This document shows, piece by piece, positions 3,234 through 63,832 of a stretch of DNA of 64,000 bases. The position numbers and the translations under genes are program-made. The notes beneath the pieces were generated by a model. The model saw only the letters and a program-made list of their open reading frames with translations, was not told the DNA's origin and searched no databases. Origin of the DNA: Octopus sinensis (Eukaryota); contig NC_043007.1 in the NCBI RefSeq assembly GCF_006345805.1, positions 37,076,001-37,140,000 of the forward strand, written 5' to 3'. Position 1 is the stretch's first letter. Each line of letters begins with the position of its first letter.

Positions 3234-3902
<669 letters not shown>

Positions 3903-15839: not shown

Positions 15840-16555
15840 AAACACAAATACATACACACATGAATATGTACGTACATACATACATACGCATACAGCCATG
15901 TGTGAATATATAAACACATACAAACATGAATATGTACGTACATACATACATACATACATACGCATACAGCCATGTGTGAATATATAAACACATACACACA
16001 TGAATATGTACGTACATACATACATACATAGATACATACATACATACATACATACATACATACATACATACATACATACGCATACAGCCATGTGTGAATA
16101 TATAAACACATACACACATGAATATGTACGTACATACATACATACATACATACATACATACATACATACATACATACATACATACATACATACATACATA
16201 CATACATACATACATACATACATACGCATACATCCATGTGTGAATATATAAACACATACACATACAGAGACTTATATGTCGCTGCGCAAACAATTATCAT
16301 AAGATTTAAAGCTCATAATCAAGTGTGTGCGTATAAGTCTGTATGTATATGTGTGTATATGCGTGTATATATATATATGTGTGTGTGTGTGTGTATGTAT
16401 ATATGTATGTATGTATGTGTGTATGTATGTATGTATGTATGTATGTATACATGTATGTATGTATGTATGTATGTATGTATGTATGTATGTATGCATGCAT
16501 GCATGTATGTATGTATGTATGTGTGTATATATGTATGTATATATGTATGTACGAA
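15840..16555. repeat. Compound minisatellite with (CATA)n, followed by (TATG)n
   Basis: Four copies of cgcatacagccatgtgtgaatatataaacacatac with expanding CATA tracts. Confidence 0.9.
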
Positions 16556-19844: not shown

Positions 19845-19890
19845 TTTACATATACATGTACATGCATATATATTATATATATATATATAT

Positions 19891-19924
<34 letters not shown>

Positions 19925-20007
19925 GCATATATATATGCATATATATATGTATATATAATATATATATATATATATATATTATATATAATATATATATATA
20001 TATATAA

Positions 20008-20060
<53 letters not shown>

Positions 20061-20066
20061 TATATA

Positions 20067-20115
<49 letters not shown>

Positions 20116-20196
20116 TATATAATATATATATATATGTGTGTGTGTGTGTATATGTATATATATATGAGTGTTTGTGTGTGTGTATGCATGTGTGTC

Positions 20197-20265
<69 letters not shown>

Positions 20266-20335
20266 GATTGATAGATATATAGATATAGATATATACATGC
20301 ACACAGACACATGCATACACATGTGTGTATATATG
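19845..20335. repeat. Long imperfect (AT)n array
   Basis: Direct reading. Confidence 0.95.
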
Positions 20336-26181: not shown

Positions 26182-27869
26182 TAAATGTGTTTAACTGACA
26201 GTCCTACACATCGTCTGAGTAGTCACATACTCAATTTCATTTGGGATGACATCGATTTCCTGTCACATCTGCCCAAAACAACAGAATCTCATTCACTGTT
26301 AGTTTGTTTTGATGCAACAAACTTATATACGAACATTCCACATGATTTGGGACTTACTACCATAAAATATTGGGTTGAGAAACATAGAGAAGCAATCCCC
26401 AGTAGATTTGCTGTACCCTTCATAGTAGACGTGGTCAGTCTCATCCTTGAAAACAATACATTCCTTTTCAAGGGAAAAATACTACCTCCAAATTCGAGGC
26501 ACAGCTATGGAGACATGATTTGCTCCAGTTTTCTCGAACTCTGTATTGGGATACTTGGAACAAAACCTATATAAAACAAAATTGAAGAGAACTATGGCAT
26601 GACCTTTAAAAGACATATAAAGGACACATGGAAAAGTTACCTTGATGATTGTTTCCTAATTTGGACCAAATCCCTAAAAAATCTGGAAGAATTCAGCACC
26701 CTCCTCAACAATCTACACTCTAGTCTCAAATTCACATGAGAAATTAGCAACACACAATTACCATTTCTTGACATAATGGTAATTAAAACAACACAATCAC
26801 AACTGATATTTATTACAAAAACACAGATACACACCAGTACCTAAATTTCAAATCATACCACCCAACACACACAAAACGCAACATCCCATACTGTCTAGCT
26901 AGGAAAATTTGTACTATAGTTGATGATCCAAATACCAGAAGCACACGACTTATAGAACTCAGGGGATTTCTGCTCAAGCAAAATTACCCTCTCCTACTTA
27001 TAGAAAATAGCATATAATGAGCAAAAGAGATACCTATAGAACAACTTAGGGCAAAACGAATCCATAAAAGGAACACAATACCATTTCTAGCAACACACAA
27101 TCCACATCACGAAAACATTTTTAACATCATCAAAACAAATTTGTCAATCATAAAACAAAGTGAAAAATTTAAAAATATAACAACTAATCAAACACTTATC
27201 TTCAGCAAAAGGTAACTACATAACCTAAAGAAACTATTAACAAAGGCAAAATTCAACACGAACAAACAGGATAAAACATTCACAGTATTCAAGTGTAATG
27301 ATAACAGATGTGGAATGTGTCAATATATGCATACTGGTAGATCCATTAGAACAAAAAATGGACAGATTTTTGCAAATGCAGATATGAACTGCAAAAGCAG
27401 AAATTTGATCTACTGCATTAAATGCCTGAATTGCAAAGAACTATATATAGGTGAGACAGGGAATGCATTATCAGAATGTTCGCGAGTCCACACACAACAA
27501 ATCCGGAACACTAATGTTCACCAAATTCCATTGAGCAAACATTTAGAGACATGTGATCAAAAAATGTTTCTAATTTTTCCATCCCACAAACTACATGATG
27601 CAAGTGAGGTTGGAAGAAAGATAAAAGGAAAACGCTTTATTAAAATGTTCAAACCTGTTCTGAATGGAAATAACAACAATAATATAACAAGTTAATGATC
27701 TCCAACACATGAATATAAGCAAATTACAGAATATCGGTATACTTGGCAAACTGTGATGTTTAAGTTGCATGCAGATTGGTCAAAACCGTATTCTAAAAAT
27801 TCAGCTTGTTGGAGCGTTCTAGAAGGTACTACAGTTGTCAAGGACTCAGCTGTCAGTTAAACACATTTG

Positions 27870-33052: not shown

Positions 33053-33630
33053 AGGCAGCGAACTGGCAGAATCGTTAGCACGCCAGGCGAAATGCTTAGC
33101 GGTATTTCGTCTGCCGCTACGTTCTGAGTTCAAATTCCGCCAAGGTCGACTTTGCCTTTCATCTTTTCGGGGTCGATTAAATAAGTACCAGTTACGCACT
33201 GGGGTCGATATGATCGACTTAATCTGTTTGTCTGTCCTCTCTGTGTTTAGCCCCTTGTTGGTAGTAAAGAAATAGGTATTTCGTCTGTTGCTACATTCTG
33301 AGTTCAAATTCCACCAAGGTTGACTTTGCCTTCCATCCTTTCAAGGTCGATTAAATAAGTACCAGTTACGCACTGGAGTCGATATAATCGACTTAATCCG
33401 CTTGTCTGTCTTTGTTTGTCCTCTCTGTGTTTAGCCCCTCGTGGGTAGTAAAGAAATAGGTATTTTGTCTTCCACTACATTCCGAGTTCAAATTCTGCCA
33501 AGGTCAACTTTGCCTTCCATCCTTTCGGGGTCGATTAAATAAGTACCAGTTATGCACAGGGGCCGATGTAATCGACTTAGTCCCTATGTCTGTCACCTCT
33601 ATGTTTAGCCCCTTGTGGGCAATAAAGAAT
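33053..33630 (+). mobile_element. Head-to-tail trimer of SINE family C
   Basis: One full unit plus two units joined at gtaaagaaata|ggtattt. Confidence 0.88.
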
Positions 33631-50559: not shown

Positions 50560-51260
50560 CCTCATCATCATCATCATCATCATTTAACGTTTGTTTTCCA
50601 TGCTGGCATGGGTTGGAAGGTTTGATTGAGGTCTGGAAAGCCAGCAGCTGCACCAGATTCCAATCTGATCTGACAATGTTTCTACAGCTGGATGCCCTTC
50701 CTAACACCAACCACTCCAAGAGTGTAGTGGGTGCTTTTTAATTGCCACCAGCACAGGAGCCAGTCAGGTGAGCCTAGCATCGATCGCGTTCGGAAAGTGC
50801 TTTTTATATACTACTGGCATGGGAACCAGTCAGGGGGCGCTGGCATCAGCGACATTTGGATGGTGCTTTTTATATGCTACCAGCATGGGAGCCAATCAGG
50901 CAGCCTTGGCATCGATCACATTCAGATAGTGCTTTTTATGTGCAACCAGTACGCGAGCCAGTCAGGGAGCACTGGCATCGGTGACATTCAGATGGCGCTT
51001 GTTACGTGACCCCAGAACGGGAGCCAGTCACGCGGACCTGGCATTGACCACATTTGGATGGTGCTTTTTATGTGCTATCAGCACAGGAGCCAGTCAGGGG
51101 GTACTGGCATCGACCACGTTTGGATGATGCATTTAATGTGCTACTGGCACGGGAGCCAGTCAGGTGGGCCTGGCATCGGCCCCATTCAGATGGTGCTTAT
51201 TACATTCCACCACAACGGGATTCAGGGGGTACTGGCCACAGCTATGATTTTGGTTTGGTG
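50560..51260 (-). mobile_element. Tail-E retroposon carrying an eight-unit 66-bp VNTR
   Basis: Units start at 50731, 50797, 50863, 50929, 50995, 51061, 51127 and 51193. Confidence 0.85.
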
Positions 51261-56620: not shown

Positions 56621-57264
56621 AATTTAGCATCCTTCTCCTTCTTCCTGCTCTGCCTTCTCCTTTTCCCTATCTCCTTGTTCTTCCTTTCTCCTTCTCCTCC
56701 TTCTCTTCCTTTGCTGCCAACAACAACATCAATACTAGACACCAGTAGAACCTACATACAGCTGTTTGATGTGCTATAAATAGAAGCCAAGTCTCTTCAG
56801 AACCACACTTACTCACTTCACAAAATGGAACAGGAAACGTTGGATAATGTAGTGCACTATTCCTGTTTAAAATAACAAATGAGCCAAAAAGAAAGGGATG
56901 GTCATAGCTGAAATACGTTTGTTCATAGATCTGCTTGATTAGAGCTGGCCTGGGGTTATACAAAAACAACAATAAAAAATATTTACATGTATGTATGTGT
57001 ATGTGTGTTTATGTACACATGTAAGTTACAATTTCTCCAGTTTTATTCCACTCTTCTTTTCTGTCTATGTCTAATCTATCTTTCTGAAAAAGATTGAATG
57101 CTCAAAATGTTAAAGACATTTCCTTTTTTTAATTTTTTTTTTGTCCCGTTTCCTGAGTGTCAAATTAACACTAATTCTGTTTTGTCTTTAAATTACTTCA
57201 TCTCTCCTTTGTGTTGTATTTTTCATCACCTCTACACCATCTTACATATGATCCTTTCTATTAT

Positions 57265-57878
57265 AGGCACAAAACCTGAAATTTGGGGAAAGGGGATAGT
57301 CGATTACATCGACCCCAGTACTCAACTGGTACGTAATTTATTAACCCCAAAAGGATGAAAGGTAAAGTCGACCTTGGCGGAATTTGAACTCAGAATGTAG
57401 CAACTGGCGAAATACTTCTAAGCATTTCGTCCAGAATTCTAACAATTCATTTCTACACTAGGCACAAGGCCTGAAATTTTGGGGGAGGGGGTCAGTTGAT
57501 TAGATCAACCTCAGTACATGACTGGTACTTAATTTATCATCCCCAAAAGGATGAAAGGCAAAGTCAACCTCAGTTGGATTTGAACTCAGAACGTAAAGAC
57601 AGATGAAATACCGCTAAGCATTTCACCCAGCATGCTAATGTTTCTTATTTCTTTATTACCCACAAGGGGCTAAACATAGAAGGGACAGACAAGGACAGAC
57701 AAAGGGATTAAGTCGATTACATCAACCCCAGTGCGTAACTGGTACTTAATTTATCGACCCCGAAAGGATGAAAGGCAAAGTTGACCTCTGCGGAGTTTGA
57801 GCTCAGAACGTAACGGCAGACGAAATATGGCTACGCATTTCGTCTGGCATGCTAATGTTTCTGCCAGCTCGGTGCCTT
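57265..57878 (-). mobile_element. Tandem array of 3-4 family C SINE units
   Basis: Repeated aaaggatgaaaggcaaagtcgacc...gaactcagaacgta. Confidence 0.85.
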
Positions 57879-59152: not shown

Positions 59153-62100
59153 ATGGATATGAACCAAATTGATACAAGGTTGTTCTCTGAAATGGAAGAA
59201 TCCTCATTCGAGTCCGTTTCTATTTATGATGATGCTCCGCAGTTGGTCACCTCTGACACAGACCTGGCAGTTCAGTCAGTATCCTCCGATGTATCATTAA
59301 CAAACTTCTTTCAGGAAACGCCAGCATCAGCTGCAACTGAACTACCATCATCCATATTGTCATCATCATCGTCATCATCATCATCATCTTCATCTTCCTC
59401 GTCATTAACAACAGCAACACCTTCACTGTCATTGTCATCTTCCAACCAACAACCTCAGTCCCAAGCTTCACCTTCTATTACGATTGTTGATGAAGAGCCT
59501 CTTGATACTCTACAAATTACCTCGGGGACACCTTCTAAGAACACTAATGCCACTAGTGTTACGTTTTCAAAGCCAGTTCAAAGCAATGAAAATCCTTCTG
59601 CGTCTCAGCAAAACCTAACCAATGTTTCCAGTCTTCCGGATCAACAACAGGTTTACCATTCCACCGAGGCAACGAATGTTATTGCCGATGTAGCACCTTT
59701 ACCCTCAGCTGTAAATGGAGGGAGCAGTCAACCAGAGAAATCAGAGAAAAACTCCGAACCATCCCCTGGTGGAGTTTCTCTGTCAAAGATAGATAAGCCA
59801 TTCAAATGTGAGTACTGTAAGAAGATGTTTTCTCAGGCCTGTCACCTTACTCAACACATTCGAACTCATACAGGTGAGAGGCCTTTTAAATGTGACTACT
59901 GCCAGAAGGCTTTCACTTTGCGTGGTGACCTCAACCGGCATATTCGCATTCACACAGGAGAGAGACCATTTCATTGTCCACAGTGTCCGAAAGCATTCAC
60001 GCTCCGTGGTGACCTGACTAGGCATGTCAAGATACACTTAGGCACAGATAAGCTGTTCAAGTGTAACAAATGTGAGAAGCGCTTTACCAGTCTTCGCACT
60101 CTCTCGATGCATTGCCGGAATGTTCATTTCGAAGAGAAGCGCTATCGATGCAAATACTGTTCTGATTCGTTTCCTGCTCTGAGTCATTTAATAAAACACA
60201 TGAGACTCCACTCGCTGAGTCACGGAGATGTTTCTGCAAACAAGGTGTATTCCACAGGTGAGGTAGGGTTGAACAAGCCACTGAAGATTAGAAGAAGCAA
60301 TGTAGTTCGCAACTTGGTGAGCAACCAAGCTTTATCTCAGGAACAGAACAAGAAAGTTCTGCAAAACTCTTCAGCGTGGTTTAACAACCAGTCAAGAGAT
60401 TTAACCAATAGGCAGGGAAGCAAGTATAACTTGGACAAGTCTCTTGTGCCCACCACTTATTTTTCAACACCTCAATGTCGAAACGTCTTAGATAAAGAAC
60501 TTAAAAGCATTTCAAAAAACCAGCACTTAAGCAATAAAAGTAGCAAACGCTCATTTGTAGAACAACAAGGTGCTGCAGCTAAAATGCTCAAGCGGTCCGA
60601 AGTTGAAGAAGTGGTCATTCTTGATGATGATCCAATAGAAGATGGCTTATCAGTCAATCAATCCAAAGATGGGGGTAAAGACAGATCAAAGGTATCAGGT
60701 GGAAACAGTAAGGTGCATTTGCCAATTAAAACAAGTCGCAGTCAGGAACATGGAATAAAGAGCGATTCCAAGAGATTACTGATTCACAGTCGAAACTTCT
60801 TGAAGTCAAACTATTCCTCAGCTCCAAAAAAAGACCACGTCCGAAAACAGTTCCAGTTCTTTGTAAATAACAGTAGGAATTCCATTGTTGGAAGAAGTCG
60901 GCTAGGTGTTCTTGATAAGGATGTACGGACATCCAGTGAAGGCCGAGTGACATCAAAAAGCATTGCAATACAAACTGAAAGAGATATAGATGAGAAAAAA
61001 ATGGAATTTATCCGGAACAATATTGAAAGTGCTGATCTGAAACATGTTGCCGTGCATTGCCGCACAAAGACTGGTCAGTGGCTATTTTACTGTGAGAAGT
61101 GTAACGAGCTATCCATGAATATTGACTTCAACACATTTTCATTACTGAACTTAGCTCACCCGCCAGATCCATTAGGTAACTTAGATCATTCTCGTAACCC
61201 CGTTTCTACTGCTCCCAAAACAAATGAATTGGGGAGAGAGAGGTCTGATATCTCGAACTATGATACTTTAGATCTGAACAGTGGGAAAAGTAATAGCAGG
61301 AGATTATCATTAGAAAAGGAACAAACTCGAATCAATAACAAGCCAAATGTTTTGAGCAACCGAAGAAAGAACAACATGCCATCAAAGACATTCTCTTGTG
61401 ACCAATGTCCACTGCAGTTCGTTGGATCTGCTGAACTGGTCAACCACTTGAAAACTCACACAAGCCAGAACAAGCCAGATATTTATTCATCAAGCAGCAA
61501 TTTGACTGAAGCGATTAAGAAAAACAGAGAACTAATCCAGATTCTCAATGGTTATTGCGATCAGTCAGAATTTGATGACCAATTCATTAACAGAAGTTTG
61601 ACCTTTGACCTTACAAACTATCAGAAGTTTTCATCTGAACTAAATGATTCTCAGTTCAGTTCCAGCTTTCCAGAAAACCTTTCCCATAGTGACCAGTTTG
61701 TTAATCTTGATAGCTATTGTGGCAATAACGAAGACATGGTACTTCTTGAAGAGATTTCCACAACTAACACCAACACCACCAACAACAACAACAGCAACAA
61801 CAATAACAACAGTATTGAAATGAACTCAATCACAGATGCTGGTAGTCAAGACAGGCTTGGAGTAAATTCTAGCAACAAAACCTCAAACACCATCAGTAAC
61901 TTTGATGTAAAATTGTCCCTAGTAAATGACTGTTCAGAACTTTCTCAGGGTAACTTCAAAAATGACAGTGGCACTTTCCTAACTGTAGACAAATCTCAAG
62001 ATCTTTCTCGAAATGATATCCTGGCATCAAGAAAAGACCAGTGTGATAAAGACATCAATTTCATGACACACAATGTAAATTTTGATGGCCAAGCAGGAGC

Positions 62101-63832
62101 AACTTATTTAGAAGAGAATGCTTACACAAGCAATCAGCCAGTGAACCAACGAACCACAACGTCATCAACATCATTAGCAGCAGCAGCACAAAATGAAATC
62201 ATTAATGACATTACTGTAGATCTGAATAAATTTCCAGTGACAAGTGAGTCCAGTACTGACCTGCAGCAAAACTTCTTTTGTATTGACCAATCTGAAAGTG
62301 ACCAAGATTCACCTCTTGTCATAACATCTGTATCTTCAGGAAACCTTCCTAATGCAGAAGACTCAGCCAGCTCTGGACATTCTCTGTACACCTGTGAGTT
62401 TTGTAAGGTTAATTATTTAACTGTTGACAATTTCGTTAACCATATGTCAGTGCATGAAGATAAAAGATTGTTTAAGTGTATGATATGCCATATCTACTTC
62501 TCCACTGTTGATTCATTCACAACCCACTTCAGAAGACACACACCCAGACCAAATTTGAAATCAAACTCTTCTGTTAAAATTGATAATTTGGAGAAAAGTT
62601 TCCAGAAGCAATCAGAAACAAACTTGGAGACTGCAGGCCAACAAAATTCCCAGAACAAAACCTCCAAACAGTTCAGTAGAGATGGCTTATTTCAGTGCAA
62701 AATCTGTAGTAAGCAATTTGATAATCACAGCAGTTTGGAGTCCCATCTGAAGAACCATACAGAACAAAGATCCCTTCCAAGTTCTGATTTGATGACAACT
62801 TCTAGTTTGAGAAGTAGTAAAGATTTGAGCCCAGATATCCAAAGATCAGAAGCCTCCTCAGAAAAGGCCCAGTTTCAATGTGATCAGTGCTTGTCTACGT
62901 TTCAGCATAAAAATGATTTTATTTCTCATTTGAAAACCCACATTGAGAATTTGGAGTTAGCATATAACCAAACTGAGGAGGCAAACAGTTTTCAAAATGT
63001 GGACACTTTGTATTTCATTGAGAAATGTAAAGAAGAATACACAGAACCTACTCAAACAGATCCTTTAAACGGTAAAGAGCTCAAACCTACAACAAGTCAA
63101 GAGAGTTCTTTGAGTACCACATCTACTTTAGCTAACAGCGTTTCTGCTACAAACAGCCCTTATTTGTGCAATGTTTGTAATCAGTCATTTGTTGAGCGTC
63201 TGCATCTTGTTAAGCATTTAATCACACACATTGGAAATAAACAGGTACTGAACAGCAGTTTAAGAAACCTAGACAGTTCACCAGCGTCTATTGAAAATGT
63301 AACTCAGGTACAGAACGACAAATTGTATAGTTGTAAACACTGCAACAAAGTGTTTACTCATATGCACCAACTACTGAAACATATGGCTGTGCACAGAAAA
63401 ACCAAGTCTTTTGTCTGTCGCTTTTGCCAAAAGGAAATAACTCTCTACAAAGACTTCATCAACCATCTGAAAATTCACACAGGACCTTTGCAATGTCCTG
63501 TCTGTCGAAAGACATTTTTACATTCGAGCCTTCTCAAATCACACGTTCTAACTCACAACATTGAGAAAGCATTTGCTTGTCAGTACTGTGATAAATCTTT
63601 TGCCCAATCATGTCACTTAACACAGCACATACGCACACACACAGGAGAAAAACCATTTGCCTGTTCATATTGCCATAAAGCCTTCTCGCTACGTGGCGAC
63701 TTGAATCGGCACATTCGTACACACACTGGCGAGAAACCATACAAATGCAATCTGTGCGAGAAAGCTTTTGCATTAAAGGGAGACTTAACCCGACATAAAA
63801 ACACTCACAAAGCTGAAATCATATTAACATGA
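59153..63832 (+). CDS. C2H2 zinc-finger protein, 1559 aa, 17 fingers, single coding exon
   Basis: Uninterrupted 4680-bp ORF; gttaccATGG strong Kozak with in-frame upstream stops; 17 CxxC-12-HxxxH motifs counted; TGERP/TGEKP linkers in fingers 1-3 and 15-17; candidate acceptor ttttcag at 59067. Confidence 0.97.
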   Translation: MDMNQIDTRLFSEMEESSFESVSIYDDAPQLVTSDTDLAVQSVSSDVSLTNFFQETPASAATELPSSILSSSSSSSSSSSSSSSLTTATPSLSLSSSNQQPQSQASPSITIVDEEPLDTLQITSGTPSKNTNATSVTFSKPVQSNENPSASQQNLTNVSSLPDQQQVYHSTEATNVIADVAPLPSAVNGGSSQPEKSEKNSEPSPGGVSLSKIDKPFKCEYCKKMFSQACHLTQHIRTHTGERPFKCDYCQKAFTLRGDLNRHIRIHTGERPFHCPQCPKAFTLRGDLTRHVKIHLGTDKLFKCNKCEKRFTSLRTLSMHCRNVHFEEKRYRCKYCSDSFPALSHLIKHMRLHSLSHGDVSANKVYSTGEVGLNKPLKIRRSNVVRNLVSNQALSQEQNKKVLQNSSAWFNNQSRDLTNRQGSKYNLDKSLVPTTYFSTPQCRNVLDKELKSISKNQHLSNKSSKRSFVEQQGAAAKMLKRSEVEEVVILDDDPIEDGLSVNQSKDGGKDRSKVSGGNSKVHLPIKTSRSQEHGIKSDSKRLLIHSRNFLKSNYSSAPKKDHVRKQFQFFVNNSRNSIVGRSRLGVLDKDVRTSSEGRVTSKSIAIQTERDIDEKKMEFIRNNIESADLKHVAVHCRTKTGQWLFYCEKCNELSMNIDFNTFSLLNLAHPPDPLGNLDHSRNPVSTAPKTNELGRERSDISNYDTLDLNSGKSNSRRLSLEKEQTRINNKPNVLSNRRKNNMPSKTFSCDQCPLQFVGSAELVNHLKTHTSQNKPDIYSSSSNLTEAIKKNRELIQILNGYCDQSEFDDQFINRSLTFDLTNYQKFSSELNDSQFSSSFPENLSHSDQFVNLDSYCGNNEDMVLLEEISTTNTNTTNNNNSNNNNNSIEMNSITDAGSQDRLGVNSSNKTSNTISNFDVKLSLVNDCSELSQGNFKNDSGTFLTVDKSQDLSRNDILASRKDQCDKDINFMTHNVNFDGQAGATYLEENAYTSNQPVNQRTTTSSTSLAAAAQNEIINDITVDLNKFPVTSESSTDLQQNFFCIDQSESDQDSPLVITSVSSGNLPNAEDSASSGHSLYTCEFCKVNYLTVDNFVNHMSVHEDKRLFKCMICHIYFSTVDSFTTHFRRHTPRPNLKSNSSVKIDNLEKSFQKQSETNLETAGQQNSQNKTSKQFSRDGLFQCKICSKQFDNHSSLESHLKNHTEQRSLPSSDLMTTSSLRSSKDLSPDIQRSEASSEKAQFQCDQCLSTFQHKNDFISHLKTHIENLELAYNQTEEANSFQNVDTLYFIEKCKEEYTEPTQTDPLNGKELKPTTSQESSLSTTSTLANSVSATNSPYLCNVCNQSFVERLHLVKHLITHIGNKQVLNSSLRNLDSSPASIENVTQVQNDKLYSCKHCNKVFTHMHQLLKHMAVHRKTKSFVCRFCQKEITLYKDFINHLKIHTGPLQCPVCRKTFLHSSLLKSHVLTHNIEKAFACQYCDKSFAQSCHLTQHIRTHTGEKPFACSYCHKAFSLRGDLNRHIRTHTGEKPYKCNLCEKAFALKGDLTRHKNTHKAEIILT

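What the first reader, a model, noticed from the sequence alone, without database searches (positions are those of the whole stretch)
59801..63808. Twin three-finger DNA-reading heads with near-identical recognition helices at opposite ends of one zinc-finger protein
Seen: fingers 1-3 (59801-60037) have helices QACHLTQH / LRGDLNRH / LRGDLTRH, and fingers 15-17 (63572-63808) have QSCHLTQH / LRGDLNRH / LKGDLTRH. Positions -1, 2, 3 and 6 are identical in all three pairs, about 1250 aa apart. The codons differ at many synonymous sites (cgt ggt gac ctc aac cgg cat vs cgt ggc gac ttg aat cgg cac), and the CxxC halves differ. Only these triplets have TGE(K/R)P linkers; the 11 fingers between are isolated or atypically linked. 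Established: ZEB/deltaEF1-type proteins use two separated finger clusters to bind bipartite sites. Inference: an old duplication kept under purifying selection, giving a bivalent factor that could bind two copies of one site (roughly GCn-GCn-nGA by the approximate recognition code) and bridge or loop DNA.
Basis: partly seen in the sequence, partly recalled or inferred. Interest (0 to 1): 0.8.

Follow-up and report, generated by a model that had tools for sequence, protein, structure and literature searches.

The report
Octopus zinc-finger protein with twin heads
A large, uncharacterised octopus zinc-finger gene carries two anciently duplicated three-finger DNA-reading modules, one near each end, whose base-contacting residues have stayed almost identical; the design is real, but it is already known from proteins such as HIVEP, ZEB and ZNF236.

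Summary

- **Twin heads:** fingers 1-3 and 15-17, 1178 aa apart, share 19 of 21 recognition-helix residues. They share only 14 of 35 other variable residues, and their synonymous sites are saturated.
- **Conservation:** three orthologues (Argonauta hians and two unnamed sources) are 36-61% identical overall but keep both heads at 90-99%. The residues that distinguish the N head from the C head are fixed in all four. The duplication is therefore old, selection is purifying, and there has been no gene conversion.
- **Specificity:** no other triplet among 1822 from 240 zinc-finger proteins exceeds 11 of 21 helix matches.
- **Distribution:** the family looks restricted to cephalopods, because an exhaustive search with its conserved central block found only itself.

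The functional reading (one protein binding two copies of a GCn-GCn-nGA core, perhaps bridging DNA) is plausible but untested.

The architecture is not unusual. HIVEP and ZEB are precedents. ZNF236 and other large single-exon octopus zinc-finger genes recovered here carry two to seven such repeated heads.

Verdict: a new member of a known kind, of moderate-to-low interest.

The parts
59153..63832 (+). Complete single-exon coding sequence (1559 aa plus stop) of an uncharacterised multi-zinc-finger protein. The gene is probably O. sinensis LOC115217032.
   Evidence: ORF listing and translation. The start MDMNQ aligns with MDLDQ of the orthologues. The exact protein is on record in GCA_006345805.1 CM016869.1. 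The Argonauta orthologue carries the name 'LOC115217032'.
59801..60037 (+). N head: fingers F1-F3 (aa 217-295), TGERP-linked, helices QACHLTQ / LRGDLNR / LRGDLTR.
   Evidence: It is 71-78 of 79 residues identical in the orthologues.
60056..60211 (+). Fingers F4-F5 (aa 302-353), joined to the N head by non-canonical linkers (LGTDKL, FEEKR). With F1-F3 they form a five-finger N cluster.
   Evidence: Conservation is 92% in Argonauta and 63-65% in the distant orthologues.
60959..61159 (+). Conserved central block (aa 603-669) with invariant H631, H635, C636, C647, C650 and H669. It may be an atypical zinc-binding domain; its function is unknown.
   Evidence: Invariant columns. Conservation is 72-90%. 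An exhaustive profile search finds only the family itself. No meaningful Pfam match: best E = 0.043, below the curated cut-off. The AF2 model (pLDDT 70) is beta-alpha-beta-beta-beta-alpha, with no Foldseek PDB match below E = 0.1.
61391..63229 (+). Span holding the isolated or loosely paired fingers F6 (61391-61459), F7-F8 (62387-62539), F9 (62690-62758), F10 (62873-62941) and F11 (63161-63229), set in a Ser/Asn/Thr-rich region.
   Evidence: These fingers are weakly conserved (13-65% in the distant orthologues). F6 is absent from those orthologues, which carry an extra finger instead.
63326..63556 (+). Fingers F12-F14 (aa 1392-1468), immediately N-terminal to the C head. With F15-F17 they form a six-finger C cluster.
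   Evidence: Conservation is 60-86%.
63572..63808 (+). C head: fingers F15-F17 (aa 1474-1552), TGEKP-linked, helices QSCHLTQ / LRGDLNR / LKGDLTR.
   Evidence: It is 72-76 of 79 residues identical in the orthologues.
63809..63829 (+). Conserved C-terminal tail, KAEIILT.
   Evidence: E1555, I1556, L1558 and T1559 are invariant in all four sequences.

Best explanation
The region is the single-exon gene of a cephalopod-restricted multi-zinc-finger transcription factor of 1559 aa.

**Origin of the heads.** An ancient intragenic duplication produced two three-finger modules with canonical TGE(K/R)P linkers. One opens a five-finger N-terminal cluster. The other closes a six-finger C-terminal cluster. 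About 1180 mostly low-complexity residues lie between them, along with a few poorly conserved fingers and one conserved domain of unknown function.

**Selection.** Purifying selection has held the base-contacting helix residues of both modules almost identical. The rest of each module, and most of the protein, has drifted.

**Most likely mechanism (inferred, not shown).** Each head reads the same core of about 9 bp, roughly 5'-GCn-GCn-(A)GA-3' by the canonical recognition code. One molecule would then engage two copies of that core with flexible spacing and orientation. It would gain affinity and selectivity for paired sites, as described for ZEB1/2 and HIVEP/ZAS proteins. The different neighbouring fingers (F4-F5 versus F12-F14) may extend the two sites differently.

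**Shown versus inferred.** Shown: the gene, the fingers, the duplication, its age and the selection. Inferred: DNA binding, equal specificity of the heads and simultaneous binding.
For: - **Gene integrity.** The ORF is intact and the exact protein is on record in the O. sinensis assembly.
- **Finger domains.** Pfam finds only C2H2 families.
- **Layout.** There are 17 fingers, with canonical linkers only inside the two heads.
- **Head similarity.** Helices match 19/21, framework 23/23 and other positions 14/35; 23 of 56 identical residues share a codon.
- **Age.** pS between the heads is 0.97.
- **Orthologues.** Both heads are 90-99% identical against 36-61% overall, with N- and C-specific residues fixed.
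- **Selection.** Between orthologues, dN is 0.005-0.08 with dS of 1 or more.
- **Single exon elsewhere.** The orthologue in a 135-kb contig is also a single ORF, as is the Argonauta gene.
- **Specific helix set.** It is absent from 1822 other triplets.
- **Paralogous head is the best non-orthologous match.** BLASTP gives 135 bits against at most 112.
- **Precedents.** The two ZEB clusters bind two CACCT half-sites with variable spacing (PMC8304685). HIVEP/ZAS proteins carry two widely separated ZAS domains, and individual ZAS domains bind elements of the GGGGNNNNCC consensus (PMC3048431; its reference list cites Fan and Maniatis 1990).
Against: - There are no binding data of any kind.
- The motif comes from an approximate code, and Leu at position -1 has no firm base preference.
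- The heads sit in different finger contexts, so their real sites may differ.
- Expression was not demonstrated here. The Logan contigs carrying an orthologue show no poly(A) tail.
- Two of the three orthologues come from unnamed species, so the taxonomic depth is inferred from divergence alone.
- Only about 130 fingers from other octopod ZNFs were available to test whether the helix set is unique.
Confidence: 0.6

Rival explanations
1. The protein is an architectural factor. The two identical heads bind two distant copies of one motif, in cis or in trans, and physically bridge or loop DNA.
For: The predicted core specificities are identical. The heads are separated by 1178 largely low-complexity residues. 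Both heads are the most conserved parts of the protein.
Against: Nothing here distinguishes bridging from simple avidity on nearby paired sites. For the ZEB precedent, the source read here describes binding of two separated half-sites in target genes, not long-range looping. No oligomerisation domain was identified, and the central block has no recognisable fold.
Confidence: 0.15
2. The two clusters have different effective specificities. The shared three-finger core is read together with different auxiliary fingers: F4-F5 on the C-terminal side of the N head, and F12-F14 on the N-terminal side of the C head. The protein would then recognise a bipartite site made of two unlike halves, or two classes of site.
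For: The flanking fingers are joined by short linkers and are moderately conserved, at 60-92%. They lie on opposite sides of the shared core, which would extend the DNA site in opposite directions.
Against: The flanking linkers are non-canonical. The flanking fingers are clearly less conserved than the heads. In many multi-finger proteins such fingers do not contact bases (general knowledge).
Confidence: 0.25
3. One or both heads serve a ligand other than double-stranded DNA, such as RNA or a protein partner. The helix conservation would then reflect that interaction.
For: C2H2 fingers can bind RNA or proteins (general knowledge). Position -1 is an unusual Leu in four of the six head fingers.
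Against: TGEKP-type linkers and the R(+6)/D(+3) and Q(-1)/H(+3) patterns are typical of DNA-reading fingers (general knowledge of the Zif268-type code).
Confidence: 0.08
4. The resemblance is trivial: a generic finger consensus, chance, or recent gene conversion between the two ends.
For: Framework residues and linkers are shared by all C2H2 arrays. One octopus ZNF has a similar first helix, QACHLTY.
Against: The next-best triplet scores only 11/21. Synonymous sites are saturated and only 41% of identical residues share a codon. N- and C-specific residues are fixed across four lineages.
Confidence: 0.02
5. The open reading frame is not a functional gene. It would be a retrocopy or a decaying remnant.
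For: It is intronless and lies in repeat-rich DNA.
Against: A 4.7-kb frame has stayed open in four divergent lineages, with strong purifying selection on specific domains. Other large octopus ZNF genes are also single-exon.
Confidence: 0.02

Closest known systems
HIVEP / Schnurri / ZAS proteins (PRDII-BF1/MBP-1, HIVEP1-3)
   Same: They are very large proteins with two widely separated, paralogous C2H2 modules that recognise the same DNA sequence (PMC3048431; its reference list cites Fan and Maniatis 1990, Genes Dev 4:29). A long, poorly ordered region separates the modules.
   Different: ZAS modules are finger pairs followed by acidic and Ser/Thr-rich segments, not TGEKP-linked triplets embedded in 5- and 6-finger clusters. 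The helices are unrelated. No HIVEP protein is among the 120 best hits. The two are not homologous beyond the C2H2 fold.
ZEB1 / ZEB2 (deltaEF1 / SIP1)
   Same: They have N-terminal and C-terminal finger clusters. Both are needed to bind two CACCT(G)-type half-sites with variable spacing and orientation, and the linker is long and flexible (PMC8304685).
   Different: ZEB proteins have a central homeodomain, a SMAD-binding domain and CtBP-binding motifs. None of these was found here. There is no sequence orthology.
ZNF236 (vertebrates to molluscs)
   Same: It is a large (about 1850 aa) protein. Its finger clusters come as three pairs with near-identical helices (15-19 of 21). One pair sits near the two ends, about 1400-1525 aa apart. 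This is conserved across bilaterians. It is the most frequent named hit to the octopus protein.
   Different: It has six paired clusters in mirror order (A B C C' B' A') rather than one pair. The helix sets are different. The alignments cover only 13-32% of the query, 14% in most. It lacks the central block. It is not an orthologue.
Large single-exon multi-head octopus ZNFs (O. sinensis LOC115208765, O. bimaculoides LOC106883442, O. vulgaris 'Xfin-like')
   Same: They come from the same genomes, and two of the three (LOC106883442 and the O. vulgaris 'Xfin-like' gene) are likewise intronless. They are long proteins in which three- to six-finger heads with matching helices recur, separated by hundreds of low-complexity residues.
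   Different: They carry five to seven heads rather than two, and their helix sets differ (for example xxxNLIK / NPSNLTR). They have no central block. They were not tested for conservation outside octopods, except LOC106883442 in Argonauta.

Membership tests
C2H2 zinc-finger proteins (Pfam PF00096 / PF13465) | C-x2-4-C-x12-H-x3-5-H fingers scoring above the Pfam gathering thresholds. | tested here: met
   PF13465 scores 182.6 bits and PF00096 scores 170.6 bits. The regex scan finds 17 fingers.
Canonical DNA-reading poly-finger array (Zif268/Krueppel type) | Consecutive fingers joined by TGE(K/R)P linkers. | tested here: met
   The feature is met only within F1-F3 and F15-F17. All other junctions are non-canonical or long.
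Canonical DNA-reading poly-finger array (Zif268/Krueppel type) | Sequence-specific binding of double-stranded DNA. | not testable with these tools
   This needs SELEX, PBM or EMSA.
ZEB family | A homeodomain between the two finger clusters. | tested here: not met
   No non-finger Pfam family matches the whole protein or the inter-cluster segments, even at E up to 10.
ZEB family | Conserved CtBP-binding PxDLS-type motifs. | tested here: not met
   One weak match (PENLS) occurs in O. sinensis only and is absent from the three orthologues.
ZEB family | Sequence orthology to ZEB1/2. | tested here: not met
   No ZEB protein is among the 120 best hits.
HIVEP / Schnurri (ZAS) | Two separated ZAS domains, each a pair of C2H2 fingers followed by acidic and Ser/Thr-rich segments. 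| tested here: not met
   The heads are triplets inside 5- and 6-finger clusters. No HIVEP protein is among the best hits.
HIVEP / Schnurri (ZAS) | Both modules bind the same DNA sequence. | not testable with these tools
   This is only predicted, from identical residues at positions -1, 2, 3 and 6.
ZNF236 orthologue group | The conserved cluster order, with helix sets KPSQLxR / KPSDLVR / KSxHLKQ recurring in mirror order. | tested here: not met
   The helix sets and cluster layout differ. The alignments cover only 13-32% of the query, 14% in most.
Effector-domain ZNF classes (KRAB, SCAN, BTB/POZ, ZAD) | An N-terminal effector domain. | tested here: not met
   Pfam finds only finger families. 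The N-terminal 214 aa are low-complexity and about 25% conserved.

The most novel reading that the evidence does not exclude
The protein is a coleoid-specific chromatin-architecture factor. Its two identical heads would clamp two distant copies of one motif and so build loops or bridges. That would be an independently evolved, CTCF-like organiser tied to the reorganised cephalopod genome.
Probability: 0.08. Interest if true: 0.7.

Novelty: new member of a known kind. Interest (0 to 1): 0.3.

Why it matters
If both heads do read the same motif, this gene gives cephalopod biology a clean, conserved and lineage-restricted example of a bivalent zinc-finger regulator.

Unlike the fast-evolving octopus ZNF expansions, its recognition helices appear fixed over a deep divergence (synonymous sites are saturated between orthologues). 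That points to a stable target sequence that could be found by SELEX or DAP-seq and traced in cephalopod genomes.

The session data also show that repeated heads are a recurrent design in large single-exon ZNF genes of octopus and in bilaterian ZNF236. That wider pattern may be more interesting than this single case.

The underlying principle has been known since 1990, so the finding adds a member rather than a mechanism.

Tried and rejected
1. **Homologue search with the N cluster alone.** It returned only proteins of 253 aa or fewer, none above 54% identity.
2. **Exhaustive profile search with the central block.** It found only the family itself plus three generic ZNFs at E above 1e-5. There is no deeper homologue and no link to a known family.
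3. **Pfam on the central block and the inter-finger segments at E up to 10.** Nothing meaningful was found.
4. **AF2 model of the central block and Foldseek against the PDB.** Model confidence is moderate (pLDDT 70). No match falls below E = 0.1, so the fold stays unassigned.
5. **PDB sequence search with the N head.** It returned only generic finger arrays (ZNF568, Aart, CTCF) at 53-76 bits per triplet. No solved structure has these helices.
6. **Species of orthologues P0004 and P0005.** A decapodiform origin is only inferred from divergence.
7. **Literature search for LOC115217032.** No paper was found.
8. **Flanks of three other octopus ZNF genes, fetched to enlarge the octopus finger sample.** No further ZNF genes were found in the flanks.
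9. **ZEB membership.** Rejected: no homeodomain and no conserved CtBP motif.
10. **Gene conversion or a recent duplication.** Rejected, because synonymous sites are saturated and head-specific residues are fixed.
11. **Evidence of transcription from the Logan contigs.** They show no poly(A) tail, so the result is inconclusive.

Full report
**What is in the sequence**

The window comes from the Octopus sinensis assembly GCA_006345805.1, chromosome CM016869.1. The exact protein is on record there. Another protein named as O. sinensis maps to the same assembly.

Positions 59153-63832 on the + strand form one uninterrupted reading frame of 1559 codons. Its start, MDMNQ, aligns with the start of two distant orthologues. 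Pfam recognises only C2H2-type finger families.

- F1-F3 lie at 59801-60037, with helices QACHLTQ / LRGDLNR / LRGDLTR.
- F15-F17 lie at 63572-63808, with helices QSCHLTQ / LRGDLNR / LKGDLTR.
- TGE(R/K)P linkers occur only inside these two triplets.

No other C2H2 finger exists in any frame of the remaining 59 kb of the window, which is repeat-rich.

**Is the resemblance more than chance?**

Over the 79 residues of each head, 56 are identical. The distribution of those identities is the telling part:
- 19 of 21 helix positions (-1 to +6) match.
- 23 of 23 framework and linker positions match.
- Only 14 of the 35 remaining positions match.

This is the reverse of ordinary finger paralogues, in which the helices diverge first.

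Further comparisons agree:
- Within the protein, F1/F15 share 17 of 23 residues and F2/F16 share 18 of 23. Unrelated finger pairs share 4-11.
- F3/F17 share 13 of 23, no more than either shares with F2 or F16. Their likeness lies mainly in the helix.
- Among 1822 tandem triplets (4031 fingers) in 240 other zinc-finger proteins, the best helix match to either head is 11 of 21. That sample includes four large octopod ZNFs. Only the three orthologues reach 21.
- BLASTP gives 135 bits between the two heads and at most 112 bits to any unrelated triplet.
- No solved structure carries these helices.

**Age and selection**

Between the two heads the proportion of synonymous differences is 0.97, which is saturated. 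Only 23 of the 56 identical residues use the same codon.

Three orthologues were found:
- Argonauta hians, named 'LOC115217032, partial', which is 61-66% identical overall (956 of 1559 query residues).
- P0004, from Logan assemblies.
- P0005, a single ORF in a 135-kb ENA contig.

P0004 and P0005 are 36-39% identical overall.

Conservation across these orthologues is uneven:

| Region | Identity to the O. sinensis protein |
|---|---|
| N head | 90-99% |
| C head | 91-96% |
| Other fingers | 13-100% |
| Inter-finger regions | 19-61% |

Between orthologous heads, dN is 0.005-0.08 while dS is 1 or more, or saturated.

The residues that distinguish the N head from the C head are the same in all four sequences. 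These are A versus S at helix-1 position 1, R versus K at helix-3 position 1, and the beta-hairpin residues.

The duplication therefore predates the split of these lineages. There has been no gene conversion, and both copies are under strong purifying selection.

**Anatomy beyond the heads**

The heads are not isolated.
- F1-F3 run on into F4-F5 through 6-7-residue non-canonical linkers.
- F12-F14 lead into F15-F17.
- The protein therefore has a five-finger N cluster and a six-finger C cluster.

The auxiliary fingers lie on opposite sides of the shared core. If they contact DNA, they would extend the two sites in opposite directions.

The 1178 residues between the heads are Ser/Asn/Thr-rich. 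They hold six weakly conserved fingers, F6-F11. F6 is absent from P0004 and P0005, which carry an extra finger elsewhere.

One well-conserved block, aa 603-669, also lies between the heads. It has invariant His and Cys residues. Attempts to identify it gave the following:
- The only Pfam hit is a sub-threshold one, E = 0.043.
- AF2 gives a moderate-confidence mixed alpha/beta model.
- Foldseek against the PDB finds no match below E = 0.1.
- An exhaustive profile search of 1.84 billion representative proteins finds only this family, plus three generic ZNFs at E above 1e-5.

As far as that block is detectable, the family is confined to the lineages found here. These are octopods plus a second, deeply divergent group. 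That group is probably decapodiform cephalopods, but I could not verify the species.

**How it most likely works**

Canonical linkers and residues such as Arg at +6, Asp at +3, Gln at -1 and His at +3 are typical of DNA-reading fingers.

By the approximate recognition code (established knowledge, not computed here), the predictions are:
- F2, F3, F16 and F17 each read GC-n.
- F1 and F15 each read (A)GA.
- The core is 5'-GCn-GCn-(A)GA-3'.

The two helix differences fall at position 1, which usually does not contact bases, so equal core specificity is the natural prediction.

The best-supported mechanism is a bivalent factor that engages two copies of one core motif with flexible spacing. Steps shown are the duplication, its age and the selection. 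Steps inferred are DNA binding, equal specificity and simultaneous engagement. Bridging or looping of distant DNA is possible, but no evidence here favours it over simple avidity on paired sites.

**Comparison with what is known**

The principle is established.
- HIVEP/ZAS proteins carry two widely separated finger modules. The 1990 paper of Fan and Maniatis, cited in PMC3048431, describes them in its title as recognising the same DNA sequence.
- ZEB1/2 need both their N- and C-terminal clusters to bind two CACCT half-sites with variable spacing (PMC8304685).

The octopus protein belongs to neither family. It has no homeodomain and no conserved CtBP motif, its heads are triplets rather than pairs, and no sequence orthology was detected.

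The session data also show that the design is common:
- ZNF236, from hemichordate and molluscs to mammals, has three nested pairs of heads in mirror order, each pair matching at 15-19 of 21 helix positions. The outermost pair lies near the two ends.
- O. sinensis LOC115208765 has seven heads with matching helices.
- O. bimaculoides LOC106883442 and its Argonauta orthologue have six heads that share the core helices (V/I)xRNLxx / Q(K/Q)SALxx.
- At least two of these octopus genes are also single-exon.

A recent survey of cephalopod C2H2 expansions (PMC12513265) contains none of the terms I searched for on recognition helices or internal duplication. No paper mentions this locus.

**Verdict**

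- The heads are parts of larger clusters.
- The F3/F17 likeness is mainly in the helix.

The evolutionary interpretation is supported. The functional interpretation is plausible but untested. The claim to novelty is weak, because this is a two-copy instance of a recurrent architecture with well-known precedents.

The finding is a new, apparently cephalopod-restricted member of a known kind. Interest is about 0.3. The main limitations are the small sample of other octopus ZNFs, the unnamed source species of two orthologues, and the absence of any expression or binding data.

Noticed in passing
window 60959-61159 (aa 603-669): A conserved non-finger block has invariant H631, H635, C636, C647, C650 and H669. 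It is 72-90% identical across orthologues. It has no Pfam family above threshold, no PDB fold match and no homologue outside this family in an exhaustive search. It may be an atypical zinc-binding or interaction domain.
   Followed up: yes
proteins P0035, P0049, P0086 and P0058 (ZNF236 of Gorilla, scallop, oyster and hemichordate): ZNF236 has three nested pairs of finger clusters with near-identical helices in mirror order: A(199) B(484) C(659) C'(969) B'(1169) A'(1724) in Gorilla. Each pair matches at 15-19 of 21 helix positions, and the layout is conserved across bilaterians. This internal symmetry was not something I set out to find.
   Followed up: partly
L007 10001-22386 (O. sinensis LOC115208765); L009 10001-17218 (O. 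bimaculoides LOC106883442); L008 10001-16831 (O. vulgaris 'Xfin-like'): These are very large octopus ZNF genes of 2276-2522 aa. Their five to seven finger heads recur with matching helices, separated by hundreds of low-complexity residues. At least two of them are single uninterrupted ORFs, like the gene in the window.
   Followed up: partly
window 61391-61459 (F6), compared with P0004 aa 1268-1290 and P0005 aa 1252-1274: The internal fingers turn over. F6 exists only in the two octopod sequences. The two distant orthologues instead have an extra finger (YQCPYC...HIQSH) that is absent from octopods. F7 has a one-residue deletion in those orthologues.
   Followed up: partly
window 60611-60631 (aa 487-493): VVILDDD is a hydrophobic-then-acidic motif that resembles a SUMO-interaction motif. 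It is identical in Octopus and Argonauta but degenerate in the two distant orthologues.
   Followed up: no
window 63809-63829 (aa 1553-1559): The extreme C-terminal tail (K/R)(A/T)EI(I/V)LT is conserved in all four sequences, directly after the last finger.
   Followed up: no
window 59360-59404 and 61781-61810: A run of 15 serines and an Asn-rich run (NNNNSNNNNN) lie in the coding sequence. The serine run is absent from the other species. Argonauta keeps an NNNNN run at the aligned position, and the two distant orthologues have neither.
   Followed up: no
window 27216-27692 (+): An ORF has a weak GIY-YIG nuclease match (E = 0.003). It is probably a remnant of a Penelope-like or other mobile element.
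   Followed up: no
window 33101-33629, 50730-51220, 57264-57638; also 3237-3899, 15848-16551, 19866-20295: There are tandem arrays with 184-, 66/198- and 196-bp units, and long ATAG/ATAC/AT microsatellites. A 100-N assembly gap lies at 2217-2316. No tRNA genes were found.
   Followed up: no
L006 15536-24434 (Argonauta hians): In Argonauta the downstream neighbour, on the opposite strand, is a proteasome 26S AAA-ATPase (PRS7-like domains). The window ends 168 bp after the stop codon, so synteny could not be checked.
   Followed up: no
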